A stretch of 64,000 nt of DNA from Setoptus koraiensis (GCA_048013815.1 CM106585.1:21328001-21392000), one strand, 5' to 3'; shown: positions 9,157 through 42,410, counted from the stretch's first letter. Numbers and translations are program-made. Notes: generated by a model not told the origin, from the letters alone.

Positions 9157-10330
<1,174 letters not shown>

Positions 10331-13558: not shown

Positions 13559-13632
13559 GTTCGACCGTTCGACTGTTCGACTGTTCGACTGTTCGACTGT
13601 TCGACCGTTCGACTGTTTGACTGTTCGACCGT
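13559..13632. repeat. 8-mer tandem repeat (TTCGACTG/TTCGACCG)x~9
   Basis: Visible tandem units; they generate the RTVEQSNS ORF repeats. Confidence 0.9.
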
Positions 13633-19600: not shown

Positions 19601-20379
19601 GAGTGAAAGCGCCGGAAATAACTCTTGCCCCGTGCGTTGGCCGGGCCCGCTGCCAGTGGCGCTGTCAGTGGCGCTGTCAGTGGCACTGCCAGTGGCGAGT
19701 GGCGGCGACCGGCGCCGCGTTGGGCACACACGAGTGGCCAAACAACGGTATTTGCGCTCTCGGGTTATTGATAGTGCGTCAGTGACAGCGATAGCCCGCG
19801 ACATGGATGCCCGCGATAGAGACGTCAATGGCGACAGTGGCCAATAAGTGGCGAAAGTGAGCCGCTCCGCAGTGACCTTGCAGATGGTGCCATATGAGCA
19901 TATGAGCGCTATGTCAGCTGACAATTTGCGAAACGATGCAAGCCAAGCAGAGCAACAGCCGACCAGAATATCTCTGTTTGTGCGCGCCTCGTGCAGCGGC
20001 TCGCGTCCGCATCAGCACGAGCCGCCGCGCACCGACAAACAAACGAAAGTAGCGGAAGTGGCGGAAGCGTCGCGATTGTTCCATTGTTCGCCATTGTGTG
20101 CCCAGCTCGCGACCGCTACTCGGGCCGCTCGCGATAATCTGGCCGGCGCGGATAATCTCGCTACTGCCCGTGATACTCGGTCTGATGCTCGGGCCTCTCG
20201 TGACGCTCGGACCGCTCGTGATACTCGGGCCGCTCGGGCGCTGTGGCCCGGGTGGCGGCCGCGGATGACGCGCAATGTTCCGATGGCCGCCAGAGGCGGC
20301 CGTGAGCGAGTGAGCGCAGTCAGCGTCGAGCCAGCCAAACGACCGCTGGCGGGCTGATTGGGTCTGATTGGGTCACGCT

Positions 20380-20429
20380 GCGGACCGATTGCGGACCGAT
20401 TGCGGACCGATTGCGGACCGATTGCGGAC
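20380..20429. repeat. 11-mer tandem repeat GCGGACCGATT x~4
   Basis: Visible tandem units. Confidence 0.9.
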
Positions 20430-21859
20430 TGACTGCGACTGTTCGCCCGCTGACGTTTGGCTGTTTGGTTGGCTGCTTGGTTTGGCACTTGTTGACTGTT
20501 CGGGCGACCGTCCGATTGCGCGAACAGGCAAACAATTGCGCCGTCTGTGACGTAATCGCATCTACGGCCGACGGCCAACAACAAACAGCCAACAACAGAC
20601 AGCCAACAACCGACAGGCAACAACCGACAGGCAACAGGCAACAACTGACGGCGGGCGGTTGTTGTTTGCCGAGTGCCGAGACAAAGCTCGTCGGACAAAC
20701 AGCAAGGTGCCCAAAGTGGCGCTCATTGTGAGCTCACGGGAGTTTTGCGACAAAACCCGACGTTTGTTATTTGCGCGGGCACGTCGCTGGCTTGTGATGT
20801 GACGGGCCAATTTGTGCCCAAATCAGTGCCCAAACACGCCGGCGATTATGCAGTGCGCATGCAGCAACCACCGCCAACCACCGCCAACCGCATTGTGTGA
20901 CCGACAATGACATTGAACCCTGGCCGGCGATGGATATCAGCAGATATTCATCGCCGATGAGCGATCAGCGAGCTTATTTGTCAAATATCAGTGCTGCTGT
21001 CGCTGATTAAATATTAACTGGCAATTGACGTTGGCGATGCCAACCAGTTAGATTAGCCGCAATGGCAAGGGTTTGTGTGTTGTCGCCATGCAGCAGGGCC
21101 ATTGATGATTTGGCAGCCATGATCGACAGTCATAGCCGGCGAGATAATTCAATGGAAACACACGCTGCTGGTACACAAATGTCACGTAATGCACATTACA
21201 TAATGGCCATCATCGCGGCGCTGACAGCTAGCTGGCAAACAATGCCAACACTGTGGCACTCAGTGGTGAGTATACTCTTGTCAGTATATCATTGCGAGAT
21301 GATTAGGTATTATGCGATCATTATTGCGACGATTGTGCATTATGCGACGATTGTGCATTATGCGACGATTAGGCGCGTTGTGAGATACTGCGAGTAGCGA
21401 TAGAGTTGCCAGTAGATGACCGATAATGACAACAAAGCGCGACCCTGTATCGCGCTAATTAATCTCCATTGCCATTCGTTGGCTCAATTGGATCACAATA
21501 GCGAGCGTCGCTTGCGTGCTCGCTGGCAGTTTCCATTGCCACACACAAACTGGCTGACGATCCCACTGTGCGACCATCCGATTGCCGGCGACTAGCAGTA
21601 GTTACATAATCATTGTGTCATAGTGTTCGGCCGCATTTGTCGATTTGTCGCTTGTCAATGCGACCGTCGCAAACAGTTGGATCATGGCCAAGGCACGAGC
21701 CACAGATAACGTACGTTTATCGCGTCCGAACTGTAGGTGTATCGACAAACACTCTCCCGTCGGTTGTTTATGTTTCTGATTGTCGCGATACCGCAGATCT
21801 CCATACTCCACAGAGATCCGCGGAGATCCGCACAAACCCGCACAGGTCCGCACAGATCT

Positions 21860-22097
21860 GGCCTAGACTCGAGGCCTAGACTCGAGGCCTAGACTCGAGG
21901 CCTAGAGGCAGCCGATGGCCACGACTTCGACCGCGTCTCTGCTCGAGGCGCATCGTCTGGGCCACTCTGGCCAGTGCCGATGCTTGCCCGGGTGCCAGAG
22001 TGATGGGTACCCAGAGTGATGGGCACCCAGAGTGATGGGCACCCAGAGTGATGGGTGCCCAGAGTGATGGGCACCCAGAGTGATGGGTGCCCAGAGT
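21860..22097. repeat. 13-mer GCCTAGACTCGAG x~3.5 (21860-21906) and 16-mer AGAGTGATGGGCACCC x~6 (21997-22097)
   Basis: Visible tandem units. Confidence 0.9.
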
Positions 22098-23349
22098 GCC
22101 CGGGGTGGCCCAAGTGGGCAGAGTAGCCCGTTGATCACTTATATGAGTTATATTGCATAATCGTCGGCCCGTATGAAACAATTGTGAGCGCACAATCTTG
22201 TTGAGGCGACCTGTTGATGCACAGGCACAAGTGGCGCCAGTGTGACATTGCCGCAGCTTTCATTATCACCACTCGGCAGCAGCAGCAGCAGCTAATTAAT
22301 TAGGTTCGTCTGTCTGTTTGTTTGTTTGTTTTTACCACTTCATTTGCCATCGGCCGTTCAATGTGTTGCGACACTGTGTGCTATATGCGCCGCTACGGTG
22401 GCGTTTGGCGTAACTGCTGCGTTCAGCTAGCTTGTGCAGTGCTGTTGCTAATCGCCGCTGCGTTTATCTGCGCCCGGATCTCGACAACAACAACAACAAC
22501 GACAACAGCAACAGCAACGACAGCAACGACAGCAACGACAGCAACGACAACAACGACAACAAATGGTAACGACGCTCGCATTTTATCTACTGCTACCAGG
22601 TACACACACCAGGGGACAGCAACATTGGCGCACATTAGTGGACGCACAAGCAAACACTGCCAACAGAAAATACCCTCTGACGTGTAATGTGTGTTGACAC
22701 AAACGCTTAATTACATAACAGCAACAACAATAACTCGCCGGGGGTATTTGCAGCACCGCAAAAGGGGTATCGAGCAACAATTGCAACTCACTAACAGTGT
22801 GAAAGTCGCCCACTGCCCACAGCGAGATTCGGCCTGCGGCCGCCTAGTGGCGGGCATGCCCAAGCAACCGTCGCGGGTAACGTTGGCCGCCAATTTCACT
22901 TGTAACTGACCGGCCATCCACTAGCTGACCAGCCTGGCAGCGCGGCCATCTTGTAACTGGCCGGCGCGGCCAAGGTTGGCGGTTGTTGTCGTTGCCGCTG
23001 TTGCTGTGGCTGTTGTTGCTGTTGTTGTTGCCGCCGCTGTTGTTGTTGCCGCTGTGGCTGTTGTTGTTGTTGTTGTTGCTGCCGTGGTGCACACGCATGA
23101 GTGTGTAGGTATGTATTTATCGTCCGCTGCTGGCGGACAAACGGACAGCGGACGACCGGACAAACGGACAGCGGTCGGTACAGTTGGTGCGGTCGCCATT
23201 AAGTCGGCTGTTACGCCGGCAACAGCGACGTTGCCTCTCGACGCTTGAGCCGCGCAGTGAGAGCCACTCGCTGGGAGCCGCCTCTTGCCTGTTACGTAAC
23301 ACACAGCCAGTTGCGTGAAATTGTTGTTGGCGGTGATTGCGCAATTGAG

Positions 23350-23460
23350 AGTCGAGCGTCTAGCGTCGACGCTTGCGAGCCCAGAGTTGAGCGTCGAGCG
23401 TCGAGAGTTGAGCGTCGAGCGTCGAGAGTTGAGCGTCGAGAGTTGAGCGTCGAGAGTCGA
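23350..23460. repeat. 7/14-mer degenerate tandem repeat GAGTTGAGCGTCGA
   Basis: Visible tandem units. Confidence 0.85.
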
Positions 23461-26400
23461 GAGGCAACAACTGCAAGTTTGCGCACTGCAGTGAGGCAAC
23501 CACAACAGCAACGACTGCAACAACAACAACTACAATAACAGCGGCGGCAACAACTGCAACAACTACAATAACAGCAACAGCGACAGCAACAAGCAAAAGT
23601 GGTGGTGCCTCCGTCGCTGTTTTCGTTGTTGTGCGGTTGTGCTGGCTCATAGCTGCATGAGTGGCAATGGTGAGCAGCCATAGGCAGCCGAAAGCCATAA
23701 GCAGCTTCCTCTGTCGCATTATGTAATGTGCGGCAGCGTTAGCCAGACTTGTGAGAATGCACGAGAACATTTACGAGAGCTAGTGTGTGTGAGAGCTGCT
23801 CATCTGCTGTCGCTGTTGTTATGTAATCATCGGTGATGTGATGCATGAACTGGCAGTGAATTGCTGGCTCGGCTGCCAGTCGGCCCAATGCCGCTCGCCG
23901 AAGCCGCCCGAAGCCGCCCGCTGAAGCCGGCCGCCGAAGCCGAGCGCACCGGCTAGCGCCAGCCGACAGTACCCTTCAGGCTCGCTGCCGCGCCGCCAGT
24001 TGAGCAACTAGCGAGCGCAAAGAGAGGAGCAACAACAACAACAACAACCAGTGTAAACTTTTCCAATGCCATTACTATCGTTATTACATAACTTCTTTTA
24101 TGTGGTGAGTAACTGAGCAACGACGAGCCTGTCAGTGTTTGCCTGAGGAGAGTAGAAAACAAGTTTCGCGATATTTATATGCAACGACGACGACGGCGAC
24201 GATCATTATAACCGCTCGGGAATGACCTGAGGCGGGGGTCGCACTCGCCACTAGCTTGCAGCGCGCTTAATGCGCCGGGGTGAAGGTCGAGTTGATCAAC
24301 TTGAACAGCGGCAACAACAACAACAACAACAACAACAGCAACTGCAACAACTGCAATGCTGCTGCAACATCGCTATTCATCGCCGAGCTCGATTCGTCGC
24401 CGTCCGCCAGCCTTTCGCTCTCCTTTCTCTTTTTGCTTTCTCATTCAACTCGCACACAACAACTGCCAATGTTTTGCCCGACAGCCGCCGCCGCCGCCGC
24501 TCAAAAAACCAAAAGTCTATTCCGACGCCCGGCGAGCGTGTCCTCCTGCCGGCAACAACTATTAGGGGAGTGCACACTTGTTGTTGTCGTCGTCGTCGCT
24601 GTTGCCGTCGCTGTTGTTGTTGCCGTCGCTGTTGTTGTTGCCGTCGCTGTTGTTGTTGTCGTTGTTGCCGTGGCTGTTGCTGTCGCTGTCGCTGTTGCAG
24701 TCGCTGTTGCATCACAACTGCTCGTTGCGGCAACTAAAACTCTCCGACGGTGTCCATGAACCTGACACGAACTCGCACAAACCGCATTCTGGCGCGTTAC
24801 AACGCGCTGCTGCGCCCATCTGCGCCCGTCTGTGCCTGCGCACAGTTGTTACGCAATCTTGATATCCACAACTCGCTATTTCGATATCCACAACTTGCTG
24901 TTTTGATATCCACAACTTGCCATTATGATATCCACAACTGGCTGTTTCCACAGCAGCGGTGCCCCCCGCTCGGCACACAGCGGCACAGTGCTCAACACCC
25001 GACTGACAACACTTGTGGCTGGCAAGTTGCGAGCTGCATTTACTCTGGCTGTGCAGCTCGGTGCAGCTCGGTGCAGCTCGGTGTAACACGCCAAAGGCGC
25101 GCAGCAGCTCCGCCGGGGCCACATCGGGAGCTCGCCAAATGTTTGCGCCGACATGCGCACCGCATTCGAACAGTCTCGGGCCGATTCGAAGCGATTCGAA
25201 TCGAATGAGCCATCGGGGGCGACAGGCGGACAGACGGACGGACGGACGGACGGACGGACGGACGGACGGAGGGCTGTTTGAGAGACGCCAACAACAATAG
25301 GGCAACAACCATCGGATGCGTCATGCGCAAACAATATGCTGGCGGCGGCAACTCGCGCGCCAGCAACTGTTGCGCCGACAACACACAACAAGCTGTATCG
25401 CCGATGTGTTGTCGTCAGCATTCAAAGTTGCTGCAAGTTACATAACAATCGGAATTATTATGTAACACACACACACACATTGTTGGCGTATTGGACAACA
25501 ATTTCGCGTGGAGCCCACTTGTTGTTGTTGTTCAAGTTGAAGTTGAACAGCACACAAACAACAACAACAACAACTGCGCACGCTGTCTGACGAGCAACAA
25601 CAGGTAGGCGTGACAGTGAGGCGAGTTAATCGGCTGGCGAGCTAACAACGACAACAACAACAACAACAACATCATCATCATGTTGCTCCCCCGAAGCAGC
25701 AACAACAACACCGATTAGTGGCGACGACACTGCAAGCGCTGCATGCGTACAGGTGAGCAGACGTGACAGGTGAACTGGCGACGGTTGCGAGTGAGCCGAC
25801 GCCGGCGGAGAGAGTTGAACAACAAGCGCCCGCCTGCTTCTAGGATCATGCTCCCATAGCCGGCTTGTCGGGTAGCCGGGTAGTCGCCGTCGGGTAGTCG
25901 CCGTCGGGTAGTCGGTGCGTCTGTCACAACGAGCGCCTCGCTGGCGAGCGTGTGCTCGCGCAACCGCCGACCGTCTCAATGTCTCAATGGCTCGCAGTGT
26001 CAGTGTCTCGAAATCTCCAAGTGTCGCTGTCTAGAAGTCTGACAATCGCCGAGATTGTGAAAAGTTGCCTGGCGAGGTACGGAGCCCGCCGATTCATGGC
26101 CATTCGTCGGCTCTGTTGGCGTGTCTCGTCGGCGTGTCTCGTCGGCGTGTCTCGTCGGCGGCATTGCGAAAATTGCCAGCTCCGGCGACTGTTGGTTGTC
26201 GCGAAATTGCCTTAAATCACAGCCATTGACATATCGCGTTGCTCACGTTGCCTAGGCACTCTAACAAATTGTAAATGAGTCACACGCAACGTGCCTCACG
26301 TTCTAAATCACTTGCAATCTCAGCCAATTCTTGCCTATTTATTTCTCTTGTCGCAACAGCCTGTTGCGTGAACAACAGCCACAAATCCAGCCTGTCTCCA

Positions 26401-29400
26401 ATGTCTGAGTCGTTGTAATTTTTGAATTATCGCCACAAAAGTTGTCCGCTTGAAGAGGGTTGAGTTCCGGGCGACGGTGGCGCCATCTCTGGCGCGAACG
26501 CAGGCCGCAATTGTGGTTAATTGTTCAACTAATTAATTAGGCACTGTGTGCAACCGGTGCTCGTTAGTTAGTGCGGCCACAACATCCGCTCGCTATGTGG
26601 CTGTGGCACACAAACGATAACGGTCCTGTTGCGCAATGCAAACTGTGCGACAGTGCCAACGGCGGTGCCTGTCAGAGCACACGTTGTTGCACGCTAATGC
26701 ACGTTGTTGCACGTTGTTGCACGTTGTTGCACGTTGCAAAGCCATCACCGGAAACGGCGTCCGATTTCGCGACTCTCACAGCCGCGTCCGCATCACAACT
26801 GTTGATGGTGGCGCCCCCGTCGCAAATGGGCAAACATGCCAAAAACACAATGCACAGACGGCTGGCAGTAGAGCGATCGAGACAAAGGCGAGCAAGCTCG
26901 TTGCGCAACCATCCAATCACCTGTCGTGCGTGTAACTGTGTTAAATTAACACAGTTAACATAACGACGCGCTTATTTGCATATTTCAATTGTGTGCGTGC
27001 CGACGCAGCGAGTTGTTTGGCGAGCTAGCTTGACAGCACATTGAGCGCAACGGTTGCGCTGTTGTCAGTGTTCACTGTCACCTGTCGTGGATGTTGCTGC
27101 GAATGAGTCACCCAAGCAACAGGTGACTCACAGCCGACAATTGTAAACATTGTGGCTGTCGCCTGTCGCTTATGGGAGCATCGTTTGCGTACGCACAGCT
27201 AACAATGCGCGGTTATGTAATGAAAGCTGCCGAGATTGACGATTGGAGGAATTGTGAGAGAGATTCCAGCGACGGGCTTGCTTTTGGCGGAATCGGCGAC
27301 GCTGTTCGCTCGTTTTCGCTCGTTTGTCTCTCTCTCACAAGGGAGTTTGTCAGAGTCTCGCAGGCACTTATAACATTAATACCGCAAACAATGACACAAT
27401 TTGCACGTTACATGCAAATTGTTGTTTGGCGCGATGGGCCGTCATGTGACACGCGAATTCGAACGAAGGCTCGCGTTGCAACAGCGACGCGCCGACAACA
27501 GCGACAACAGCGACAACAGCGACGCGCCGACAACAGCCACAATGGCGCCCACTACGTCGACGAGCATGAGCCGCACAACAGGTAACGGCGGCTTGCGCAG
27601 CCGCTTGGGGGCGCACAATGGGCACATCAATCGATAATTGTTGTCTCGTTGGCACGGTGATATAATAATGATGATATATCAACGTGCCAGCGAGAAACAA
27701 TGCAAACCGGTTTGCCGGTTGTGTCGTGCCGCCATCCATTATCGTTTGTCTCTTTTGATCAGTCTTTTGGCAAGCAGTTGGCAGGCAGCGCGCACAGTTG
27801 CGCAACTAGCTTGCCAGAGCGCACACGGTTTGGGCTGCGCTCGCTGCGCATTTTGTGTGATACATAATTCACACAGCAACATGTAAAAACATGCGAAAAC
27901 TTATATGAAAACGTTGAAAAATATACTAAAATATAGAAAAATATCCATGAAAACACAACTGTTGTCGCATTGTCGCAATCTGGAACAATCATCATTGGCG
28001 AGCTTGTCGTGGCAAGCTCTGCAAAGTTGCTTGTTTGTCACAATGTCAATTCAAGCTGCCGTTGGTCGGCGACAGAAACGATCAAAATCGATGGCCAGCG
28101 CACAGTCACACAGTGGATGAAATGCCGACTAAATCGAGAATAATCGAGTATTGTCATTGAAAGTTGATAATTGAAAATCATCAATCAACTTGTTGTTTGC
28201 AAACGCAACGTCTGACATGAACGACACATGAATTAAATGCCATTAAATACCCACTGCGGGCCAATGTCACACTTACTGTTGCTGTTATTAGATACTGTTA
28301 TTTCCAGTTGACAACCGGCCAAAACCGGCCCGCATGAATTAATAGCGTTATTGTTGCGTTATTACTGTGGTTATTGGGCGCTTGTCGTTGTTGTTATTGT
28401 TGTTGTTGTTATTGTTGTTGCTGTTACTTGTTGTTGGCGTTAGTGTAAATACTGGCGACACTCGCAAACAATGTGACAATCGCAGACTGTGCAGTGTAGA
28501 GACAATTTCTACATGACAGTTAATTTGATCTTGGCATCAAATTAACTGTCGTGGCGTCTGGCTATCACAATTGTTTGCGCATCAGTTTAAATTGCTGGAT
28601 GCCCAATGTAATCACAATTACAGACACAATACGACAGTTTCGTCTATTTGCTTTGTTACTGTTTATTGACGACTGTATAGGCGCCACACCAACCGCCGCA
28701 ACAACCGCCGCAACAACCGCCGCAACAACCAGACCGACGACAGCAACGGCCACGACCGGTCGAGCGTCGTTCGTGGCCCGATGTGACACATATCAATCAA
28801 TAAGTAGCGCGGTTGTTAAGTTATCGGTTGTCTTGTCTGGCCGATCGACGAGCCGTTACTTTGAATAGCCATCTAGCCTAGACGATCTAGCCTAGACGAT
28901 CTAGCCCTAGATCATCTGTGTGCCCGACGATGTGGTGAAATATGACACCCACACACTGTCTGCCACGACACTCTGTGACCGTTATGGCCGGCCTGTTGAT
29001 CGCAATCAAGGCGCATTTTTGCAGTTTCAACGACAAATTGGAGAGCGCCGGATGTTGCAAGATTTGACAGTCACTCTATCGCACGCTATCTCAGCAACAG
29101 TAAACAGCTCTCACTGCCATCAAATAGCGAACTGTGAATAAACAATTAATCAGCCAGCCGATCAATTAATCAACAGATCGCGATATTAGTTAATCACAAG
29201 CTAATTGAAATAACTGTGCTGCGCAATTACAAGCGCGTGATGACATTTATTTTGGCGTCGTCATCTCGTTTTGTGTTGTGTCAGAATATGATTTTTGGTT
29301 TAGTTTTCGAGTCACAGTTTAAAACGGCTCATTACATATGTACAATTATATCGACATTACAGATCGAGGCAAATAATAGTCGATGATATAATAGGCGACA

Positions 29401-32369
29401 ACAGTTATGGCTCGATCGTTGGTGATGGGCGCATCGCGGATTTATTATCGGCGCTGAGCGAAATCATCGGCGCTGAGCGAATTGAAAGAATTAATGCGTT
29501 ATATCATCAAATTGCGCGCATGTTATGTAACGAGCAAGCTACCATGAGCAAGTGTTAGTCATCTTTCCAGAAGCTTGCTTGGGATTATAAATTGAATGAT
29601 TGGAAATGGCTGGCATAAGCTAAGAGCGGCTATCATGATGGCCATCATGGTCGTCATCGTCATCATCATTAGATAGCGGCAAGTATCATATCAATTGGAT
29701 AATGGCAACTTGTCGATGATAATGATAGCTAGCGAGCACCACGTCATGTGTCGCTCATCGTATAATAGTGATACTAGTGATATTATTGTACAGTGTGAGC
29801 ATAAAAAGAGTGGATTACATAAGATAAATGGATAACAGCCCAAGAGATAACATTGAGAGACATGATAGGTTACAAGGTTACAATACCATATAGTGGTTGT
29901 CCTCGTCCTTGCACTTGACTTGCTGCTTAGCCAGCTTGACACTGACATTCACCTAGACATTGAAAAAGAGCTAGCTACACACAGAGCACAGAGCAGCCAG
30001 ATAAGCCAAGGGCACAAAATGGCGACAAACTGATTGATTACATAGTTGAGTTGAGCCGGCTTGCAAGAGCTCAATTGATGTACGAGAGCCAACAAACTAA
30101 ATGAATATTATTATTATCACAAGTAGTGGTAGTATCAGCAGCAGCGGTTCTGCCAAGCTCGCCAGTTATAAATATAAATAAAGTTGCTACGCTCGCTTGC
30201 CAAGCTAGCTGATGGAGCTGAATGGTGCAAAAGATAACAGACAACCATGAGACCATATAACAGCTACGCTAGAGTCATAAAATAAAACAAACTTGAGCAA
30301 CCATCCCTCTTCAACGGCAACGGCAACAGCAACGGCAATGGCAACGCCAATGGCAACGGCAACGCCAATGGAAACGCCAAAAAACTGTTACGTAACTAGT
30401 GACTAAAACTCGGGTGAAACGAAGTGACAAACTCTCTAGTTAGTAGCCACCGCCAATATAACAACCTTTGCAAAACACTGAGCTTGTCGAGCCGAAATTT
30501 CGGCAAATGATCTGGTGAACAGACTAGAAAAATTATGAAAATTATGGCGACACAAGCTCACGCGCTTATTTTTTCCTCGCTAACCTGTACAGGCGTCTCG
30601 AAAATACTCGATAATTCTCACTAATACTCCACAATAATGCTACAATCAATGATTGGCAGCCATTGAGCAGTTACATAATTACATACAGTCGCCAAGTCTG
30701 GTCGGCCTGGCTCGTCGCATCTCGGCCAGTTGAATAGTCGCCCGTCCTGTCCTCAATGTCGTCGTTCCTCGTGTTGATGAACTTCGCTCTGTTCCGATGA
30801 GCGTCGCAATACCCAGTTCCCATTAATTACTTGATTGTAATTAATTAATTTCCGATTATTTCCAATCGTGACGCAGACACAATTGCAGCCATTGTTACAT
30901 GATGTCATAATCATCGATATCCCGCGAATTCAATTGATGGCGTCACCGACCGCAGGAGAATTGAATAATTGAGGGAAATTGGAGAAATTGGAGAAATTAA
31001 AGAGATTGAAGCGATTGAAGCGATAGAAGAAATTGAAGAAATTGAAGAAAAACTGACGCAAATCAATTCTTCTGCACTGCGGCACAGTAACTGTGCTGAG
31101 CAGAATTTCACTTCTCGGTGAACTGCGCCGCTCTCCGCCGATCATTCACGTGCATCGCTGTTCCGGAAAATGAGCCAAAAGCGCACGCTGAACAGCCTGT
31201 GCGCAGTCACAGGTAACTGCTGCAATCGACGGCAATTCGTATTTGAAGAAATCGCCTCTTATGTCATATATTATATTGTTTTAGGCCCTGTTTGCTATAT
31301 CCGATGGTTTCGAGCTGCAGAGCAGCATGTCGGCAATATGTGAGTTGCCGTAATTGGCTCGACAGGTGCCGTTGCGAGTTTGAGCCGACAATCGACGATC
31401 ATGATGCCATGAATCATCATGTGTGTCTCAGTGCGAGTAATACGCCTGAATCAGCCAATCGTGCCGATCGGCTTATTAGCTAATGGCGGAGGGCCTATCA
31501 GCGTGGATAATACGATAATATAAATGGGGAGAACGAGAGGATAAGCAATTGGCAAGGAGGTGGCAATTGTATTGAAACAGACGATGGAAACGGGCTGGCA
31601 AAAACAAGTCAAGTTAAACACAAATTGCGCGAGCCAAATTGAACAAAAGGCTGTTATGCAAGCAGATTTTGCTTTCTCTGGCTCGTTTTATCACTGTTGT
31701 TTCGACACGAGCCAGGCCGGGATAATATTGATATTTTAAAACAACTGTCAGAGAGTTACGACAGTTCACAGTCTGGGCAAAAAGGGAAAAGATCAAGCTC
31801 ACGCTATTACTGGCTCTGTTATTGCCATCATCGGTATTATGGCTGCCATTTGGATGGCGCTGCCAACCTAACCGATTGGCACCATCACCCAAGTGTCTGT
31901 TGAATCACATCCAGCTCGAAGCCGACATGTTGTGCCACAAAATTGTATGGCTGATTTGGCGGATCTGGCTAGATTGCTCGCCACGATCAGCGTGATCAAG
32001 CCGAGGGGGCCCCACGAAGCGCGCCTTTGGCCGGCCCGTCGACAGGCACGAGTGGCGCGAGTTGTCGGGCTTATTTGTGGGGCTTTGCAGGGTATATTTT
32101 GTAATTTAGTGGTAATTGGGTACATTTAGGTACATTTTTGGTGCCACATGGGCATGCATAAAATCACTGTCAGAACTGTTTTGGGCTAGCTTGCTTGGTC
32201 AGACCGTTGCATTGTTGCTCTGACAATTGTGATTGTTGTAACTATTAATGGTGGCCAATTGTGCACTGGTGCAAATTGCTCGCAGCAGCATGTTATTTGC
32301 TGTTGATACGTGTAGATATTGTGTTGTGGTATCGGCTGCTGTCACACTGGCGTCGTTGTTGTCTGCCAG

Positions 32370-32460
32370 CAACAACAACAACAACGACGACAACAACGAC
32401 AACAACGACAACAACGACAACAACGACAACAACGACAACAACGACAACGACGACAACAAC
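32370..32460. repeat. (CAA/CGA) mixed trinucleotide repeat, mainly a 9-nt unit CAACAACGA
   Basis: Visible tandem units. Confidence 0.9.
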
Positions 32461-35147
32461 ATCGGATCAGATGCACTGGCGATAGAGAGGCACTCGAGAG
32501 AGTGCAACAGACAGCGTTTGGCGGCGGCAGCGGCGGCAATTGCAACGGTCTTGACATATGATATGACACACGACGGTTGTGGCGGTTACACAACGACAGC
32601 GGCAGCGCCATCTAGCCCTAGTTGGCGGCAAGCGGGCCAACTTGCAATTTTGGCTAGACAGTTTTTGGCAGTGCTACAGGGCGAGCTGGCATGGGTAATG
32701 GCTGGTGTCGTTGATTGTGAGTTGTCTAGTTCAAGTTCAAAATGACAGACAAGTTCAAGTTCAAGGAATTTGCTGGCTTATTTATCTATTATGTGTGAGT
32801 GTGCATTATAAGTTGGCTATAAGTGTAGCTACAAGCGGCGCAGCTAGAAATAGCAAGCTGGCTGATATGTTAATTTGATCGAGTTTTTTCCTTTTTGTGT
32901 TATGTAATAGTAATAGCGACACTACTGCTACCTATGCGATTTGTATGGATATAATTACACGACGTTGTGTGTTAACATTGTGCCCTGTGTCAACTTTACG
33001 CTACACACACACGCACACCAACACTGTGTTGGCAACACACACACGCACACAACTGTCGGTAGTCTAGACGGCGGAGACGGTGGACGACAAAAATAATGGA
33101 GCATTGATCAAAAAGTGTCACTTGTTGCCTCGAGACCTTTATTTATTATTGTGCCAGCCAGCTGGTAATACGATTCACTTTGCAATTCACTCGGTGAATA
33201 AACGAAAGTTGCCACTATTCACCGATAGTGATTCGCCATTATCGCGGCTGGATCCCGTCCATGTATCCGTCTATCCACGCATTCATGCATCCATGTATCC
33301 GTCTGTCCATGGATAAATAAATGCATTTATCCGCCTATCCATGGATAAATGGATACATGTATCCACGCTAGCGAGAACGGCGTCAAGGGCGGTTATCGCA
33401 GCCTACAGCGACATGGTTGCATCAAGCTGGCATTGATATATAGTTGATATATAGTTACACATATAGCTACATAATAGTTGCGTGAGTGTGTGTGTGTTTG
33501 ACCGTGGCACACACACACGCACGCACACACTCATGCGATGAATGTATATAAATATATTAATGTATAAATAGACTAGACTAACACTGACACCCACACTGAT
33601 TTTAGATGCTAATAGTGGTAGTTGCGCCATTAATTACAGTTACGTAACTGCGGCTGTGGCTGCCATAATTGTGAGCAAACAGTGCACAGAGCAATGTAAT
33701 TAATGGCACTCTCACTCGATTAACGAGCTCACAAATTTGCGGCTTTCCACCATTTCAATGCTAATAATGATACTAATACTAATACTACCAATGCCATACA
33801 AACCGTCTACGATACAAAGCGTATGCGGGCCCTGGCGACCGTCGTCGCAACTACACGCTGGTAACTGGTACTGTCACTTGGTAGCGTCACCACTTACACT
33901 TTTGTGAAATACTCAATCATAATCATAAAATAAAAATAAAAATAATAAAATATAATTTTTCCTAATGATAAACATCATTATAAAAACTGTAATCAACAAT
34001 GGGTTGCGTGAGAGTTGCCTATTGTGAAATGATTGAGTGCCAGCGAAAATGTTAGAAATGTAATAATAGCAATTGTTTTTGCAACCGTCGTGTTTCATTC
34101 ATCTTTATCGGATAAATTTTATCGTTGTGCTCGTTGCCATATCTCGTCCTGTCGTCGTATCGTGGCATCTATTTTTGATCACAGGACAGCGAACCGATAG
34201 CATCATTTATTACATGCTTACATCATGTCTCACAATTGTGCCGAACGTTACTTTTGCTCTAGCTACTTGCAATCAATGGCAGACGGCAGTTGTAACGGCA
34301 GCTCGTTGTTTGTCATTTGTGTTTATTTCCATCACAATTGTACAATTGTGATGGAAATAATTGCCCAAATAGCGACATTGCGTCAATTAATCAATCGAAT
34401 ATCCTCTCTTCACTTGAGTGACTTTATGCGCGAGTCCACGTTTCGACACTCGAACGACAGCCGACGACGGCGAGCCAATGATAGAGCCAATGATAGGCCC
34501 AATGATGGCGAGCGATTGGCGATGAATGGGTGCAAAAGAATAAACAATTGTCGCATGAGATACATCTAATGTAATGCAGCAATAGCTACATCTAATGTAA
34601 TGTAACAATAGCTACATTGGCCACCAGTGACAGCTGACACAGCCGATAGTGTGTTGGTTGCATGACATAACAGTGTTATGACTAGTGTGACTATTGTCGA
34701 GTGTTGCGCAATATAATAATATAATAATATAAATATATCAATATAAACTAAAGTAACATATACAAATGGGAGCGGAGCGCCGTTACAACAACGGCCACAA
34801 CGAACAACAACAAATGCATGATGAGCAACAAGTGCATGCGTTTGGCTCAAAAGCTGGCATAAAGTCGCAAAATGACACCAAACGGCAAGCGATAAGACTC
34901 ATAAGACGGATTATGAGTCAGTTTGAGAGAGTTTGCAAGATGTGCGTTGCGCAAGACGCCGCCATGAGCACATCAAAGCGTCATATGCAACCACATATAC
35001 AATTATCATATCACATATATATAAATATTACAGTGCAAGTATGTGCAAAATCTAGCCATAAAACCCGCTGAAATGTCATAATGGCATAATGCGTCGCGAC
35101 ATTGTTTGCGCAAAATGGCAAGCGCGCTTGCATCACACAACAACAAT

Positions 35148-35207
<60 letters not shown>
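35148..35207. repeat. (GAC)n microsatellite, ~20 units
   Basis: Pure trinucleotide run. Confidence 0.95.
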
Positions 35208-35209
<2 letters not shown>

Positions 35210-37399
35210 CAGTGCCATGCAAAAGCAAGCAATGCCGAGCTGGCCATGTTAATAGCTGATACTCACAATATTTGTTGTATTACGTAACATTTGATACACT
35301 TGTGTGTTGCAGGCAAATGTTAGGCCATTAGGCGAGCTAGTTTAGTCAGTTAGTTAGCTAGTTGGTTGGCGGTGATAACTTTGCGCTTGTGCCAGCTCGC
35401 CTGTCCGTTATCTTGCCAGTTTATCGCCAAGTAACGTTTCTTTTTATTATTATTAGTATTACTATTTATTTAGATTGCTATCTCGGCTCGTCAGCGCCAC
35501 ATAAACAGCGTAGCGAGCGCTATTTATGTGGCGCTGTAACGGTAATACGGTCGCATATCCATATGCGACTAGCTAAGGTTACCATTTCATCTGATGGCAG
35601 CCCAAATATCAGCCCGCTCATTGCTGTATATTTAGTCTATTTAGCTTACAGATTAGACATATTATATCTTTTATTATATCATACGACTTGTATGTGTGTA
35701 GAGTGCATGTGGGCGCAATGTCAATGTTACACAAACACCGTTTTGCACACTTTTGGGCCCGTTCACAACGCCACCACAACATTATACACAAAGTTGTGTA
35801 TTGATCGTGTATAAATGATGATATAAATAGCCAACTGGAGGCAATTAATTCTCCACATTGGCTCATTGTTTGTTTTGTCTAGCTGTCTGTTCAATGTCAA
35901 TGCTGTTGTGCTGCCAACAACCGCCAACTACCGCCAACCGTTGTGCTGCCATCAACCAACAACAACCGCCAACAACCGCCAACAACCGCCAACAACCGCC
36001 AACAACCGCCAACTACCGCCAACAACCGACGACAACAGTCTCTATGTGCAGCAGTTTGACATTGACATTGAATTTAAACTATCGCCACTATTAGCGGTGC
36101 AACAAATAAGTCACAAGTTATCAAGTTGAGATAGTTAAGTCAATGTCATGGCGCAGTTTCGTGAGATTGACGCATGGCGCTAGCTACATACAAAAGCTTA
36201 TACTGGCTGATAATATATATATATTAGTATTTGTATTAATTTTAATACAACTAATGCTGATAATTGCTGTTACACAAACATATTGCTGTTATTACTATTA
36301 CTATTACCACCAGCATGTTATCTGCCATAAATGTGTGCAATATGGCAGTGACACAATCGACGCTCCACTCAAACGCTACTCGCACTAACAGTTACACTGA
36401 CTTACATTTACAATGTTGTTACGTAACGTCTGCTGCGCTTTGCAACGCTCGCAAAACTGCCAAAACACAGCTCTTACACAATATACTTACTATTATACCA
36501 ATATCCACGTTATGTACGCGCTATTCACGCACTATTCACGCGCAAATAGCGGCCCTCAATTGGGTCGTGTCGTGTCGTGTCCTGTCACAGGTGACAACTG
36601 GCAACATTGGCGCTAACTAATGATAATTATTCAAATGATATTTATTCAAAACACAGCGACTACTCACAAGTGTCATGAGTCAACTATCGGGCGGCGATTG
36701 GCGGCTCGCAACTAGCGGCCAGTCACTGGCCGCTAGTAACTGGCAGCCAGTTGTAGTGATGAAACAGCGCCATCTTTGCGCCGTAAGCGAGCGAGAGTAG
36801 TCATACGATAATCGATGCCGATTATCTCAACTGGCAACCAACAACTAACAGCTCGCACAACGCAACAAACACAGTCTGGCCAATCTCTGTTATCACAGCC
36901 TATTGCGTAATACTCACAATACAGTACAGACAATATAATATTGAGTTGATTATTAGCGCTACAGTTTGAGAGTGACAGCGTCGTCGTGAGCGACGACTAT
37001 CTAACGTTTTGCTCGGCACAAACTGGCAATGGTAACTGTTGCACGACGACTGCGAGCCGTTTTTGATTGCGCAACAGTGGGCGCATGTTACAACAATAAC
37101 AACAACAACGACGACAACAACAACAACATCCTCTTGTGGCGTCGTTATCTCGTCGCTGACAGCGTTGCGTCGTGCCTAGTTGTGTTATGTAAGCGCTGCC
37201 ATCCAGTTGATAGCATCAACTGCGGTCGCCGGTCGCGTTGCCTAGTGGCCGATCGCCGCAACCTCGAGTCTCTCGACTCGAGAGTCTCGAGCCAGCTCTC
37301 AAACGAACTCTCAAACAGACCCTCAAACAGTTTGAGTCAAACTGTCTCGAGGCAGATCAATCTCACACTTGGCCTCTCGCCGTGTGTATCGTTTGTGTG

Positions 37400-38846
37400 T
37401 TACGTAATGGCGTGCGAGTGCAAATTTTCTAGTGGCTCACTCAATGTTGAGCCTGCCGGAGCGTGGGCACCAGCAGCAGTCGATGATGTAAAACTGTGCG
37501 CGCGATGCTTATCTGGCTGCTGTGGCTTGTCTCAGATCGAGCGTCCGGGCGACCGGGCCGGCTGACAGTGACTGCCAACAGTGACTGCTAACAGTTATTA
37601 TCTGCCGGCCCGATGAGGGCTCTGTTGCGCAACAGTGCGCCTCTCGTTAGCTCTCTCACTAGTTTGTTGGCTCTCGCTAGTTTGTCGGCTCTCGCTAGTT
37701 TGTCGGCTCTCGTCGGCATTCCGACTGGCGCTGGCTGCCGACGAGAAGCCGACAAACCGACGACTCGCCAGCGAAAAGAAGAGAAGAGAGGAGAAAAGAA
37801 CAGTTAAGCAGCAGCCGAGAAAAAGCCGAGAAAAGGCCGAGCAACGGGCACGCATCAACGCCAGCCGCGACACCGCGGCCAAACGGGCCAATTGGCGGCC
37901 ATCTTTTCTCTCGCCGGCGCCACATTACGTAAGCCGGAGCTGATGAGTGAGAGTGGCGCAGCACAGCGTCAGCGTGTATGTGTGTCAGTAGTGAAAGTGG
38001 CCGTAATGGCTGGCGTTACGTAACGTTAGCCGCTAACTGTTGCGCTGTTGCCTTGACTGGTGCGTGAGACGACGACGGCGCCGGCCAGCATGGCCCAGGC
38101 CCTGCATTATGTAACACACGCTTCATTATATAATACACGCTTCGTTATGTAACACACGCTTAGTTATGTAACAGCGCTGCTATTCAGTGCGCTGATGCTG
38201 CCGCTGATAATGGCCACGCCGGCCCGGCCAGAAGACCGTTATTTAATCGTTACGTAACGCTCGCTCGTGTGTGTGTGTCTCACTGTGATGTGTGCTGTTA
38301 TGCTGGTGTGTGACGGCACTTGAGCCGCTCAAGTTGAGCGTCCGTCGGCCCGATAACGCGCCGGCACAGTGAAGCGGGCGGCCGAAGCCGCGGCCATGAG
38401 CAAACACTGTAATGGCCGTAATGGCGCTCGCAGTATTTGCATTCCGCTGACCACTGGCCGCCCGACTCGCTGGCCTTGATGGACACGGCCGACCGACTGT
38501 CCACGCCCCACAGCGCTTAACCAAACACTCGACCGGCTGTTGGCTGCAGTTGCCGTTGCCGGCCAGTTTCTCAGCCGTCGAGCTGACCAGCGCTTCGAGC
38601 TCCGAATCAGAGCTTCGAGCTTCGGAAAGCCAAATCCGAGCTTCGGAAGGCCAAATGCGAGCCTCGAAAAGCGAAATTCGTACGCGAAATGCGAGCTTCG
38701 AAAAGCGAAATTCGAATGCCAAATTCGAAAGTGAAAGTTGCCGACGAAGCAGCTGCTCGGAGCTCGCAACGCCGACGGACGGCCATTACGTAATGTGTGT
38801 GTGTGTGTGTGTGCACTAGCTCATGCGCTGGCTGCCTATTACGTAA
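37400..38846. promoter_or_regulatory. Homotypic cluster of PAR-bZIP/D-box sites (candidate enhancer)
   Basis: Nine TTACGTAA/TTATGTAA sites in 1.45 kb at 37400, 37925, 38016, 38107, 38145, 38164, 38250, 38786 and 38839, mostly with different flanks. Confidence 0.55.
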
Positions 38847-39738: not shown

Positions 39739-42410
39739 CGCTGGAGCGCGGCGACAAGAGCAACAAGTGCAGCGCAAACAAACAACACGGCGGCGAGTGA
39801 ATAGCGACAGAGCAGCCAGCGAAAAGCGCGAAAATCGCGACAGAACAGCCAGCGAACAGTGCGACAGAGTAGCAAGTGAATAGCAGGTGAATAGCGATTG
39901 TGTAGCGGAAAAGTCAGCAGTTTGGCTGCGTCTTCCTGGGAGCCAGCAAATTGGCAGCCTGCAGCAGCCAGCCAGCGATCGGTGTGGCCATTGACAACAC
40001 AACAGAGTGTCGCGCTGTTATCTTTGCTGGCTGTCGGCAGTTGCGAGTTGCGTAATATTGCGCAACTCACTGTATGTTTTCATATTATTGTGCTCGGCTG
40101 TATTGTGTGTGTGTGTGTGTGTATACATAGACACACAATCTCGACAACACACACGCACACACAATAATAATAATAACAACAACGGCAATAACAGCCAGCA
40201 ACAACAGGCAACTCGGTGACAACTATGACGGCCTTTACGACAACGAGCCAGTTTCAAGTTCAAGGTCGCGCTCATCACACCCACACAAACAATTTGATGG
40301 CTCACACAAACAGAATCCATTGTTGTTGTTGTTGTTGTTGTTGCTGCTGCTGGCTGCTCAAAAGGAAACCTGTCGTGCTGCTGCCTACAGGTGCTTTCAC
40401 TCTCTCGCTCCGGCGGCGCCGACAACAGCAACAACAACAGCGCAACAGCAACAACAACCGCGCAACAACAGCGACAGCCACAACAGCGCAACAACAGCGA
40501 CAGCCACAACAGCGCAACAACCGCGCAACAGCAGCGACAGCGCAACAGCAGCGACAACATCGTCGGTCTAACTGCTCGCCGGGCCTGGCAGCGTGCGCAA
40601 CAGGCAAAAGGAAACGGTTGAAAAATTCCATCAATTGAAACTCTTGCCAGACTCAACAAATGTGATCGCTCTCACCCGACGCCGCTCTTACATCATCGTG
40701 TCGGCGCTGTTGTCGCTGTCGCTGTTGTCGCTGTCGGTGTCGCTGTTGTCGTTGTTGTTGTTGCTGCTGCCGTTGTTGCTGTTGTGGCAGCCGGCTTGCC
40801 GATTTGGCCGCTGTGGCGCTGCGAAGTCGCCTGTTGGCTGCGGGCTGAGAGTTGTCGAGCTTTTGCAATTGTAATCAACAACAGAGCGCCAATCACTCTC
40901 GCTCGTTTTTTATTTTCTCTTTTTTCGAAATATCCAGAACAACTATTTAGAGAAACTATTCGGCGCTAATCGAGACTAAATTGAGACAAACCCGGCTCAG
41001 ACTCAATTGAAGAGCCGCCTCAGATTGTCTGCCTGTCGAGCCGCAGCAACAACCACACCGACAACAACAACACCCTCGAAGCAACTGTCGACCAGCCAGC
41101 TTGCTGTATCTGTGTGTGTGTGTGTGTGTGTATTATAATAAGATGACTCCTAAAATTATTATGCAACCATTATGCTCTCTAGCTGTAGTGCTCGATTGCG
41201 CCCACAATCGGTCGTGTCGTAACTAATCGCGTGATTCGCCATCTATCGCTTGCTGTTAGTCAACCGGCTGAGAACTGTTGCAACTCTCTCCCCTGCGCTA
41301 AAATGTTTTTTCCATTTAGATTCTGGCTAAATTCTAGCAAATTTCTGGCGAAATTATCCTCTCAAACTCAATTGTTTTGTTGCCTTTCCGACCGCTCTCT
41401 GTCTGTCTTGCTGTTGCCTTCGCGACATCGGGTGCAATACCAAGCCAACGGTGGCCTCGAACTCTTGTGTCTCGATTGCTTTTTCTAGGCTCTTCCACCA
41501 GAATAACGCCAGCTCAAATCAGCATCGTTTTCACTTTTTCCATCGTTTCTCGGACCCGTTTTCCAGCTTCAGCCAACCAGCTTGAATTGTCCTTTTTTTC
41601 TTTCGGCAGCTCTCTGGTTTCTCGGTTGCCTGTCGGGCGTCAGCAAACAATACCAAATACAAATGTCACACTTTTCTCATTTGTCCATTTTGAAATTGAA
41701 TCATTTATTCACAGATGCAGAAGGCGCTTATTGATGCATCTTCACCTTGTTGAGGCAAACAACATCCAACAACTTTGCTTTATCCGCCATCGAAGAGATA
41801 TTTTCGCCACGAATGAAAATCAAAATTTAGTCAGAGCAGTGGCTCCATCTATGATTGCGGAATGGTACTTTGAGGTAAAAAAGTGCGCGTTTTTTTCTCT
41901 TCGAGTCGAAATTTTTTCTTCGAATAGAAATTTTCGACTCGAAAACTCGCACGCATCGCATTTGATCAAGAGTGAACTTTTTTTTTCTTCTAGCGATTTA
42001 ATAAACCTGTAGTATTCGAGTGCAATGTTCGAATTGATTTTAAGAAAAATACTTTTATTCATTTGTAACACTTTGATCGGTATTGGTTGATGATTGATAA
42101 TTAACGTGGAACATAGAAAACACTGAAATTTGTGTGAAATTTGTTCCATTTGTTAACATTGAACAATTCGAATATTTTTCATCTAACAGTTTGTTTCCTA
42201 AAAAATCTCCTCTTTCATTGATATTGTGGTTGTTGTTGCTGATTGTTGCCACTTGAAAGCCGCTTGCTTACACGGTATCATGTGTTGTGTCCTAGTATCT
42301 ATGAATACCTATAAGCATACATGAGCATGTATAAATCATGTGTCGATGATATTCATCAGTTTTAACTAATTGATTAGTTTCTAAATTACAATGCGACAAT
42401 TTATGACAAT

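What the first reader, a model, noticed from the sequence alone, without database searches (positions are those of the whole stretch)
21196..38846. Massive over-representation of PAR-bZIP D-box palindromes (TTACGTAA/TTATGTAA) upstream of ovo
Seen (manual count): 12 TTACGTAA in the window, 11 of them between 23.3 and 38.9 kb (23292, 30388, 33640, 35280, 36419, 37400, 37925, 38016, 38250, 38786, 38839). There are also ~19 TTATGTAA/TTACATAA (e.g. 21196, 21602, 22711, 23719, 23819, 24084, 25438, 25458, 27213, 29523, 29815, 30671, 32900, 38107, 38145, 38164). A given 8-mer is expected about once per 65 kb at uniform composition. Nine sites fall in 1.45 kb (37400-38846). Flanks differ, so this is not one dispersed repeat. 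Known: RTTAYGTAAY is the site for PAR/E4BP4-type bZIPs (Pdp1, Vrille, Giant). Inference: a large bZIP-driven control system for ovo/svb, linking it to the circadian or moulting clock (Vri/Pdp1) or to gap-gene patterning (Giant). I am not aware of this having been described for this locus.
Basis: partly seen in the sequence, partly recalled or inferred. Interest (0 to 1): 0.75.

Follow-up and report, generated by a model that had tools for sequence, protein, structure and literature searches.

The report
Dense bZIP-site field upstream of ovo
A gene-free stretch upstream of the ovo gene in this apparent mite genome holds 28 exact copies of a DNA word bound by one class of gene switches (PAR-type bZIP proteins), far more than chance gives, but the scan noted similar excesses in many other loci, so it is probably not special to ovo.

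Summary
The window has 13 TTACGTAA, not 12, and 11 of them lie at 23.3-38.9 kb. It also has 20 TTATGTAA/TTACATAA, 17 of them at 21-39 kb. Expected counts are 0.2-1 per octamer, and simulated sequences never came close. Three results point to selected protein-binding sites:
- 60 of 66 half-sites carry the extra purine of the 10-bp consensus RTTAYGTAAY.
- Only the two single-base variants that keep this consensus occur.
- The flanks are unrelated, apart from one 19-bp tandem repeat.

The field lies in a 32-kb intergenic gap upstream of ovo. It is absent from the window's other non-coding DNA. The only non-coding block shared with the closest relative found is a perfect 22-mer holding the site at 23292.

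The ovo-specific reading is only partly supported. This scan already holds 44 notes mentioning PAR-bZIP, and all those shown lie elsewhere in this same genome (Dscam, muscleblind, Fas1, AP-2, AhR and others). I could not check them. Ovo loci of other animals show no excess. PAR-bZIP control of an ovo gene is already published for C. elegans lin-48 (CES-2). I read the field as a homotypic PAR-bZIP site field, one instance of a probable genome-wide habit. No binding or expression data were available.

The parts
21196..38846 (.). D-box field: 28 exact octamers. 11 are TTACGTAA, at 23292, 30388, 33640, 35280, 36419, 37400, 37925, 38016, 38250, 38786 and 38839. 17 are TTATGTAA/TTACATAA.
   Evidence: Counts and positions. 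Markov expectations and simulations. Clustering. The ten longest ORFs tried inside it have no Pfam domain. Rfam and tRNA scans of the whole window found nothing.
37400..38846 (.). Densest module: 9 D-boxes in 1.45 kb, interspersed with short tandem repeats and TAATGGC words.
   Evidence: None of 5000 random placements reached 9 sites in 1.45 kb.
23291..23312 (-). Conserved 22-mer AACTGGCTGTGTGTTACGTAAC (read on the ovo strand), which holds the D-box at 23292.
   Evidence: It is the only significant non-coding match between the window and the closest relative's ovo locus, L010:2586-2607. It has the same orientation relative to ovo, lying 4.95 kb upstream of the ATG in L010 and 13.0 kb upstream here. 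E = 1.4e-4; about 1.4e-5 perfect 22-mers are expected by chance.
38105..38173 (.). 19-bp tandem repeat (3.6 copies) that supplies three TTATGTAA sites, so these three are not independent.
   Evidence: (family D17).
9398..10267 (-). ovo first coding exon: a SNAG-like N-terminus ([10 protein letters not shown]) followed by C2H2 zinc fingers. The coding sequence continues in 9164-9302 (-).
   Evidence: Pfam zf-C2H2 and zf-H2C2_2. Up to 87% identical to Ovo/OVOL/LIN-48 proteins over the zinc-finger third of the query. Exon matches in relatives.
42407..45724 (-). Neighbouring multi-exon membrane-protein gene with no Pfam domain. Its 3' end bounds the intergenic gap. Exons lie at about 45553, 44356-44230, 43804-43576, 43453-43325, 43210-42828 and 42660-42407.
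   Evidence: ORFs. Exon-by-exon nucleotide matches to relatives L003, L006 and L008.
10268..21195 (.). Proximal upstream region of ovo (GC 53-62%), which is poor in D-boxes: only 10360 and 15094.

Best explanation
The stretch 21.2-38.9 kb is a gene-free regulatory domain, 11-29 kb upstream of the ovo coding start. It carries 28 exact D-box octamers, 26 of them independent, and nearly all fit the 10-bp form RTTAYGTAAY.

The sites are most likely real, selectively maintained, high-affinity binding sites for dimers of the PAR / NFIL3-Vrille / Giant class of bZIP factors. Activators (Pdp1/HLF type) and repressors (Vrille/NFIL3/Giant type) of that class recognise the same palindrome. A field of many strong sites would therefore make the whole domain respond to the activator-to-repressor ratio. 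That would work as a stage or tissue gate laid over whatever local enhancers the domain holds. By position, ovo is the likeliest target gene.

This is probably not an ovo-specific device. The scan's notes report similar fields in many long introns and intergenic gaps of this genome, so ovo would be one of many targets of a broadly used factor.

Shown here: the enrichment, the consensus fit, the sharp variant spectrum, the restriction to one domain, one conserved site, and the intergenic position.

Inferred: which protein binds, that ovo is the target, the gating mechanism, and the genome-wide scope. The last rests on unchecked notes.
For: - Enrichment of 13-120 fold, depending on the word and the background model.
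- A purine at -1 in 60 of 66 half-sites, P = 3e-12, although that position was not used to find the sites.
- Inside the domain only two of the 24 single-base variants of TTACGTAA occur in numbers: C4>T (10) and G5>A (7). Both keep RTTAYGTAAY. The other 22 variants occur 0-1 times.
- The half-site matrix follows bZIP logic. TTAC|GTAA is 13 observed against 0.2 expected. TTAT|GTAA plus TTAC|ATAA is 20 against 1.7. The double variant TTATATAA is 3 against 1.7, so not enriched.
- CpG observed/expected is 1.18, so the T variants are not methylation decay.
- D-box words are the top discriminating 7- and 8-mers of 21-39 kb against the window's other non-coding DNA.
- Flanks are unrelated except in one tandem repeat.
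- The perfect 22-mer holding site 23292 is the only non-coding block shared with relative L010, and it is collinear with ovo.
- Relative L001 has three D-boxes within 0.9 kb, lying 3.4-4.3 kb upstream of its ovo. The other ~58 kb of gene-dense DNA from relatives has no TTACGTAA and a single TTATGTAA.
- TTACGTAA is used as the Giant recognition word in PMC3197655. TTAYGTAA is the D-box of DBP/E4BP4, and vrille is described as an E4bp4 homologue, in PMC6687812.
- CES-2 (PAR bZIP) sites upstream of lin-48, the nematode ovo, are described in PMC5010242 and PMC13355510.
- Scope: 44 scan notes mention PAR-bZIP, and all those shown are in this genome.
Against: - No binding, chromatin or expression data exist. 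No RNA run holds the stretch.
- I could not verify that this genome has a PAR-bZIP gene. Only an unchecked scan note mentions vrille.
- Target assignment rests on position alone. The field starts 11 kb from the ovo ATG, the ovo transcription start is unknown, and another gene's 3' end lies 3.5 kb beyond the field.
- Density is not conserved. L010 has a single D-box in the 7.5 kb upstream of ovo that could be read.
- 56 ovo-related loci (some only distant zinc-finger matches) from other animals show no excess: TTACGTAA 5 against 3.9 expected, variants 24 against 20.
- In mouse ChIP data the best DBP/E4BP4 word is TTATGCAA (PMC6687812). That word is not enriched here (4 observed against about 2 expected), so the binder's preference differs from the mammalian in-vivo profile.
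- The genome-wide claim rests on notes I could not test.
Confidence: 0.6

Rival explanations
1. A dedicated control system for ovo. The field evolved specifically to couple ovo/shavenbaby to a circadian clock, a moult clock or gap-gene patterning through Vrille, Pdp1 or Giant.
For: The field lies in the gap directly upstream of ovo. One site is conserved and collinear with ovo in L010. There are three D-boxes upstream of ovo in L001. PAR-bZIP control of ovo exists in C. elegans, where CES-2 also affects developmental timing (PMC13355510, PMC5010242). Vrille/C-EBP motifs are cited as epidermal-differentiation inputs in Drosophila (PMC4053989).
Against: 44 scan notes mention PAR-bZIP, and those shown describe the same excess at unrelated loci of this genome: Dscam, muscleblind, Fas1, AP-2, AhR and RhoGEF. 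Ovo loci of 56 other organisms show no excess. The C. elegans lin-48 locus has no perfect D-box within 10 kb upstream, so a working PAR-bZIP input does not need such a field. No paper in the library links svb with Vrille or Pdp1 as its regulators.
Confidence: 0.15
2. The field regulates another gene, or none in particular. It could be a downstream enhancer block of the membrane-protein gene at 42.4-45.7 kb, or an architectural or boundary element bound by a factor unrelated to PAR bZIPs that happens to prefer the same palindrome.
For: The densest module (37.4-38.8 kb) lies only about 3.6 kb from that gene's last exon but 27 kb from the ovo ATG. C/EBP palindromes and PAR/C-EBP hybrid words are enriched as well: TTGCGCAA 18 against 3.5-4.7, hybrids 9 against 1.7. 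So more than one bZIP class may be involved.
Against: In relatives, the same membrane-protein gene sits in compact loci with a different downstream neighbour and no D-boxes (L003, L006, L008). The conserved 22-mer and the L001 sites travel with ovo. The 10-bp consensus fit is exactly that of PAR/NFIL3-type proteins.
Confidence: 0.15
3. The field has a non-functional origin. The octamers would be by-products of a mutational process, microsatellite slippage or decayed mobile-element ends, with no selection for binding.
For: Three sites do arise from a 19-bp tandem repeat. The domain is full of microsatellites, and several sites abut CA/GT runs. Density is not conserved in L010.
Against: Flanks are unrelated across 26 sites. 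The variant spectrum is confined to the two consensus-preserving changes. The purine preference at -1 lies outside the counted word. There is no CpG decay. A perfect 22-mer is conserved in otherwise unalignable DNA. The window's other microsatellite-rich non-coding DNA has almost no sites.
Confidence: 0.07

Closest known systems
D-box / PAR-bZIP sites (DBP, HLF, TEF and NFIL3/E4BP4 in vertebrates; Pdp1, Vrille and Giant in Drosophila; CES-2 in C. elegans)
   Same: The same octamers TTACGTAA and TTATGTAA with the same flanking rule, R at -1 and Y at +1. PMC6687812 defines TTAYGTAA as the D-box. PMC3197655 uses TTACGTAA as the Giant word.
   Different: Known D-boxes act singly or in small groups near promoters or inside compact enhancers. 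Here 28 perfect sites spread over 17.6 kb. The best mouse in-vivo word, TTATGCAA, is not enriched here. The binder is unidentified.
CES-2 response sites upstream of C. elegans lin-48 (ovo orthologue)
   Same: A PAR bZIP acts directly on the upstream region of an ovo-family gene. CES-2 is also tied to developmental timing (PMC5010242, PMC13355510). LIN-48 is 81% identical to the window's zinc-finger region.
   Different: The nematode input was gained in one lineage and rests on a few imperfect sites. The lin-48 locus has no perfect TTAYGTAA within 10 kb upstream and only ATTACGCAAT at -1222. The mite field is an order of magnitude larger and, according to the scan notes, is repeated at many other loci.
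Drosophila shavenbaby (svb) upstream enhancer array
   Same: A large gene-free region upstream of ovo/svb that presumably holds distributed enhancers. The known features of the fly array are stated from my own knowledge and were not tested here.
   Different: There is no sequence similarity to test. The library holds no paper naming Vrille, Pdp1 or Giant as svb regulators. In PMC4053989, Vrille/C-EBP motifs rank high in Svb-independent epidermal genes, not at svb itself.
Homotypic clusters of transcription-factor binding sites
   Same: Many copies of one factor's site packed into non-coding DNA next to a developmental regulator. There is turnover of individual sites, with one conserved anchor.
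   Different: The word is unusually exact (perfect 8-10 bp matches rather than degenerate ones), and the field is unusually long: a 17.6-kb field holding a 1.45-kb core.
NRG element / 'OxPhos motif' TTAYRTAA of fly nuclear respiratory genes
   Same: The same core word, described as an ATF-like motif TTAcgTAA (PMC6086935).
   Different: That element is tied to OXPHOS genes (PMC6086935). None of the genes I identified in this window is an OXPHOS gene.

Membership tests
PAR/NFIL3-type bZIP binding site (D-box) | 10-bp consensus RTTAYGTAAY: a palindromic core with a purine 5' and a pyrimidine 3' | tested here: met
   22 of 25 TTAYGTAA sites fit the 10-mer. 60 of 66 half-sites have R at -1, P = 3e-12. 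Only the Y4 and R5 variants occur.
PAR/NFIL3-type bZIP binding site (D-box) | Bound by a PAR-domain, NFIL3/Vrille or Giant protein of the same organism | not testable with these tools
   No protein-binding data exist, and this genome could not be searched for the genes. An unchecked scan note (s1-370770) mentions a vrille gene.
Homotypic binding-site cluster in a cis-regulatory domain | Site density far above a composition-matched background, and spatially clustered | tested here: met
   13 against 0.2-1.0 and 33 against 1.6-2.6 expected, with simulated maxima of 3 and 9. None of 5000 random placements reached the observed clustering. 28 against 3 sites compared with other non-coding DNA, P = 3e-9.
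Homotypic binding-site cluster in a cis-regulatory domain | Evolutionary retention of sites, or of site density, in related species | tested here: inconclusive
   One site lies in a perfect 22-mer shared with L010. L001 has 3 D-boxes upstream of ovo. L010 has only one site in the 7.5 kb that could be read, and L007 has none. Contigs of relatives are too short to reach the equivalent of 21-39 kb.
Homotypic binding-site cluster in a cis-regulatory domain | Enhancer or silencer activity that depends on the sites | not testable with these tools
   This needs reporter assays. No RNA or chromatin data were available.
ovo/svb cis-regulatory region | Lies in the intergenic DNA 5' of ovo with no other gene in between | tested here: met
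   The ovo ORF is at 9398-10267 (-). The next gene's last exon is at 42407-42660 (-). The ten longest ORFs tried in 21-39 kb have no Pfam domain, and the window has no Rfam or tRNA hit.
ovo/svb cis-regulatory region | Specific to ovo rather than generic to the genome | tested here: inconclusive
   Within the window the field is confined to one domain. However, 44 scan notes mention PAR-bZIP, and all those shown are at other loci of this genome. These notes are unchecked and could not be verified here.
NRG element (OxPhos motif) | Located in or next to nuclear genes of oxidative phosphorylation | tested here: not met
   The genes identified in the window are dynein, DnaJ/TPR, JmjC, ovo and a membrane protein. 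None is an OXPHOS gene.

The most novel reading that the evidence does not exclude
In this compact mite genome, fields of perfect RTTAYGTAAY sites mark most long regulatory domains, including ovo, Dscam, muscleblind, Fas1, AP-2 and AhR. On this reading a PAR-type bZIP pair (activator against repressor) serves as a genome-wide licensing or timing factor for developmental and neural loci. That role would be comparable to the ones Zelda or GAGA factor play in flies, and it has not been described for this factor class.
Probability: 0.3. Interest if true: 0.75.

Novelty: new member of a known kind. Interest (0 to 1): 0.5.

Why it matters
If the sites are bound, this locus gives a very clean natural test bed. 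Dozens of perfect sites for one factor class lie upstream of a master regulator of epidermal and germline differentiation.

It would add a second ecdysozoan lineage in which a PAR bZIP acts on an ovo gene. The first case is C. elegans CES-2 acting on lin-48.

The larger point is the genome-wide pattern reported by the scan. If it is confirmed, one bZIP class dominates the regulatory landscape of a compact arthropod genome. That would make enhancer domains predictable from sequence alone and would give a handle on stage or moult timing of many genes at once. For ovo alone, the result is a plausible but unproven regulatory input of a known type.

Tried and rejected
- Overlap with OVO autoregulatory sites. 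A CNGTTA core precedes only about 5 of 17 G-flanked half-sites, close to the roughly 25% chance expectation. This was read by eye from the listing. ACNGTTA is 23 observed against 14 expected in the domain, which is weak. Rejected as the explanation.
- A dispersed repeat or mobile element. The repeat finder found only microsatellite families and one 19-bp tandem repeat. Pairwise flank comparison found no shared flanks.
- CpG decay as the source of the T variants. CpG observed/expected is 1.18.
- A hidden gene or RNA in the field. No Pfam, Rfam or tRNA hit.
- Conservation from population data. Contigs of the best runs matched the window letter for letter, so they say nothing about conservation. 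No RNA run was available.
- Cross-species alignment. Relatives' non-coding DNA does not align, apart from the 22-mer.
- Extending L010 further upstream. Two ORF look-ups failed.
- Identifying the organism. The window's proteins are not in the collection. The homologue search with the membrane-protein ORF returned only weak, unnamed hits. The label 'mite' comes from other agents' notes, and I did not verify it.
- C. elegans lin-48 as a positive control. Perfect-octamer counting does not recover the published CES-2 input, so a low count elsewhere does not exclude regulation.
- Two literature searches were too broad and returned nothing useful.


Full report
**Observation**

Direct counting finds 13 TTACGTAA in the window, at 15094, 23292, 30388, 33640, 35280, 36419, 37400, 37925, 38016, 38250, 38786, 38839 and 63755. 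It also finds 12 TTATGTAA and 8 TTACATAA. Nine sites lie in 37400-38846.

Expected counts for TTACGTAA are 1.0 from base composition, 0.8 at Markov order 1 and about 0.2 at orders 2-3. In 200 simulated windows per model the maximum was 3 at order 1 and 2 at order 3. The three-word family reached at most 9 and 7, against 33 observed. With the 21-39 kb stretch as its own background, the counts are 11 against 0.09-0.28, 10 against 0.33 and 7 against 0.33.

TTACGTAA and its overlapping words head the window's list of 8-mers by observed/expected ratio. The sites are clustered: 28 of 33 fall in 17.65 kb and 9 fall in 1.45 kb. None of 5000 random placements reached either figure. Contigs from two other public runs cover most of 33.5-39.3 kb and match it letter for letter, differing only by two insertions in a tandem repeat. 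The sequence is therefore real.

**Are these binding sites or a compositional accident?**

Four results point to selection for a protein-binding site.

- The flanking positions, which were not used to find the sites, follow the 10-bp PAR/E4BP4 rule. 60 of 66 half-sites have a purine at -1 (P = 3e-12), and 22 of 25 TTAYGTAA sites fit RTTAYGTAAY.
- Inside the field, only two of the 24 single-base variants of TTACGTAA occur in numbers: C4>T (10) and G5>A (7). Both keep the consensus. The other 22 variants occur 0-1 times.
- The half-site matrix follows bZIP logic. TTAC|GTAA is 13 against 0.2. One T-variant half gives 20 against 1.7. Two T-variant halves (TTATATAA) give 3 against 1.7.
- CpG is not depleted (observed/expected 1.18), so the T variants are not methylation decay.

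Flanks are unrelated across sites. The exception is a 19-bp tandem repeat at 38105-38173 that supplies three TTATGTAA, which leaves 26 independent sites. The related C/EBP palindrome TTGCGCAA (18 against 3.5-4.7) and the PAR/C-EBP hybrid words (9 against 1.7) are enriched more mildly.

**Where the field sits**

The window holds these genes:
- a dynein heavy-chain C-terminus (36-1841 +)
- a DnaJ/TPR gene (2399-3211 +)
- a JmjC gene (7390-8707 +)
- the first coding exon of ovo (9398-10267, - strand), with a SNAG-like N-terminus and C2H2 fingers that are up to 87% identical to Ovo/OVOL/LIN-48 proteins

On the same strand, a multi-exon membrane-protein gene ends at about 42.4 kb. Its exons are confirmed by matches to relatives. 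The stretch 10.3-42.4 kb is therefore intergenic, upstream of ovo and downstream of that gene.

The ten longest ORFs tried in 21-39 kb have no Pfam hit, and the window has no Rfam or tRNA hit. Within the window the field is specific to one domain. D-box words are the top discriminating 7- and 8-mers of 21-39 kb against the other non-coding DNA (10.3-21 kb plus 46-64 kb). The site counts are 28 against 3, P = 3e-9.

**Relatives**

The window's own proteins are not in the protein collection. The closest ovo loci come from short-read assemblies and metagenome contigs. Only coding DNA aligns with L001, L002, L007 and L009.

The closest relative is L010, which is 91% identical over the zinc-finger match. 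It encodes a 965-aa Ovo in one ORF with the same N-terminus. Its only significant non-coding match to the window is a perfect 22-mer, AACTGGCTGTGTGTTACGTAAC. This corresponds to window 23291-23312 and holds the D-box at 23292. It has the same orientation relative to ovo, lying 4.95 kb upstream of the ATG in L010 and 13.0 kb upstream here. E = 1.4e-4, and about 1.4e-5 perfect 22-mers are expected by chance.

L001 has three D-boxes within 0.9 kb, 3.4-4.3 kb upstream of its ovo. The other ~58 kb of gene-dense DNA from relatives (L002, L003, L006, L007, L008) has no TTACGTAA and a single TTATGTAA. Density is not conserved in the part of L010 that could be read: one site in 7.5 kb.

Across 56 ovo-related loci (some only distant zinc-finger matches) from diverse organisms in metagenomes (326 kb), there is no excess. 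TTACGTAA is 5 against 3.9 expected, and the variants are 24 against 20. So one site is conserved, D-boxes recur upstream of ovo in at least two relatives, and the saturation itself appears lineage-specific.

**Not special to ovo**

The scan's index lists 44 notes that mention PAR-bZIP. Every note shown lies in this same genome, on both of its pieces. They describe the same kind of excess in other long introns and intergenic gaps: a Dscam intron, muscleblind, Fas1 introns, AP-2, AhR introns, a RhoGEF locus, a region near vrille, and others.

These are unchecked AI notes, and I had no way to read other parts of the genome. Their number and agreement still make an ovo-dedicated system unlikely. 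Other follow-up agents call the organism a mite. I could not confirm that.

**Comparison with what is known**

- TTAYGTAA is the D-box of DBP/E4BP4, and vrille is described as an E4bp4 homologue (PMC6687812).
- TTACGTAA is used as the Giant recognition word (PMC3197655).
- The same word is also called the OxPhos or NRG motif in flies (PMC6086935). That does not fit these genes.
- The library holds no paper naming Vrille, Pdp1 or Giant as regulators of svb.
- PMC4053989 mentions Vrille/C-EBP motifs as general epidermal inputs in Svb-independent genes.
- There is a direct precedent for the proposed regulatory link. C. elegans gained lin-48 (ovo orthologue) expression in the excretory duct cell through upstream CES-2 sites (PMC5010242). 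CES-2, described as the homologue of Pdp1-epsilon, also affects developmental timing (PMC13355510).
- The lin-48 locus itself has no perfect TTAYGTAA within 10 kb upstream, only ATTACGCAAT at -1222. A working PAR-bZIP input therefore needs far fewer and weaker sites than are seen here.

**Verdict**

The motif assignment to the PAR/NFIL3/Giant class of bZIPs is well supported by sequence logic. The binder, the target gene and any clock or gap-gene connection remain inferences.

The best reading, at about 0.6, is a homotypic field of selected PAR-bZIP sites in the distal regulatory domain of ovo. It would act as a gate on the activator-to-repressor ratio, and it would be one instance of a genome-wide habit of this species. 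This is a new member of a known kind. The genome-wide pattern is the more interesting lead and deserves a direct whole-assembly test.

Noticed in passing
window 23337-63892 (18 sites; 12 of them in 23-40 kb): The C/EBP palindrome TTGCGCAA occurs 18 times against 3.5-4.7 expected. The PAR/C-EBP hybrids TTGCGTAA and TTACGCAA total 9 against 1.7, and TTGCGTCA is 8 against 1.3. A second bZIP class may share these domains.
   Followed up: partly
window, 41 sites; for example 23306, 63750, 36738/36746: AACTGGC/GCCAGTT occurs 41 times against 10-24 expected. It forms the 5' part of the conserved 22-mer at 23291-23312 and overlaps the D-box at 63755 (TTACGTAACTGGC). It may be a partner motif.
   Followed up: partly
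window 37404-38782 and elsewhere (31 sites, 19 in 21-39 kb): TAATGGC/GCCATTA occurs 31 times against 9-20 expected. Several copies directly abut D-boxes in the dense module, for example TTACGTAATGGC at 37400 and GGCCATTACGTAA at 38786.
   Followed up: partly
window 38105-38173; 38590 and 38649: A 19-bp tandem repeat creates three TTATGTAA sites, an example of binding sites born by tandem duplication. Nearby tandem repeats differ in copy number between public runs.
   Followed up: partly
L010:7547-10444 compared with window 9398-10267 (-): The closest relative found encodes a 965-aa Ovo in a single ORF, with the same N-terminus ([10 protein letters not shown]...) and a long low-complexity linker. 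The window's first exon has 289 aa. The short form here is therefore a recent reduction or a lineage difference. This bears on scan note s1-370914.
   Followed up: partly
L001:2237-2291 and L010:3285-3339: A 55-nt non-coding block (89% identical, GAAGGTT-like repeats) is shared upstream of ovo by two relatives but is absent from the window. In both relatives, D-boxes lie 0.7-0.8 kb further upstream of it.
   Followed up: partly
window 42407-45724 (-), and ORF 51398-52876 (-): A multi-exon membrane protein with a long low-complexity N-terminal exon has no Pfam domain. It is conserved in relatives and in metagenome contigs, where its downstream neighbour is a PIN_4 gene rather than ovo. A 492-aa polyQ ORF further upstream is unassigned.
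   Followed up: partly
window, 13 sites: GGGGCCCC occurs 13 times against 0.4-0.8 expected. Other scan notes report GGGCCC excess elsewhere in this genome.
   Followed up: no
L065 (C. elegans lin-48 locus), position 8779: The only PAR-like word within 10 kb upstream of lin-48 is ATTACGCAAT at -1222. There is no perfect TTAYGTAA, even though CES-2 regulation of lin-48 is published.
   Followed up: partly
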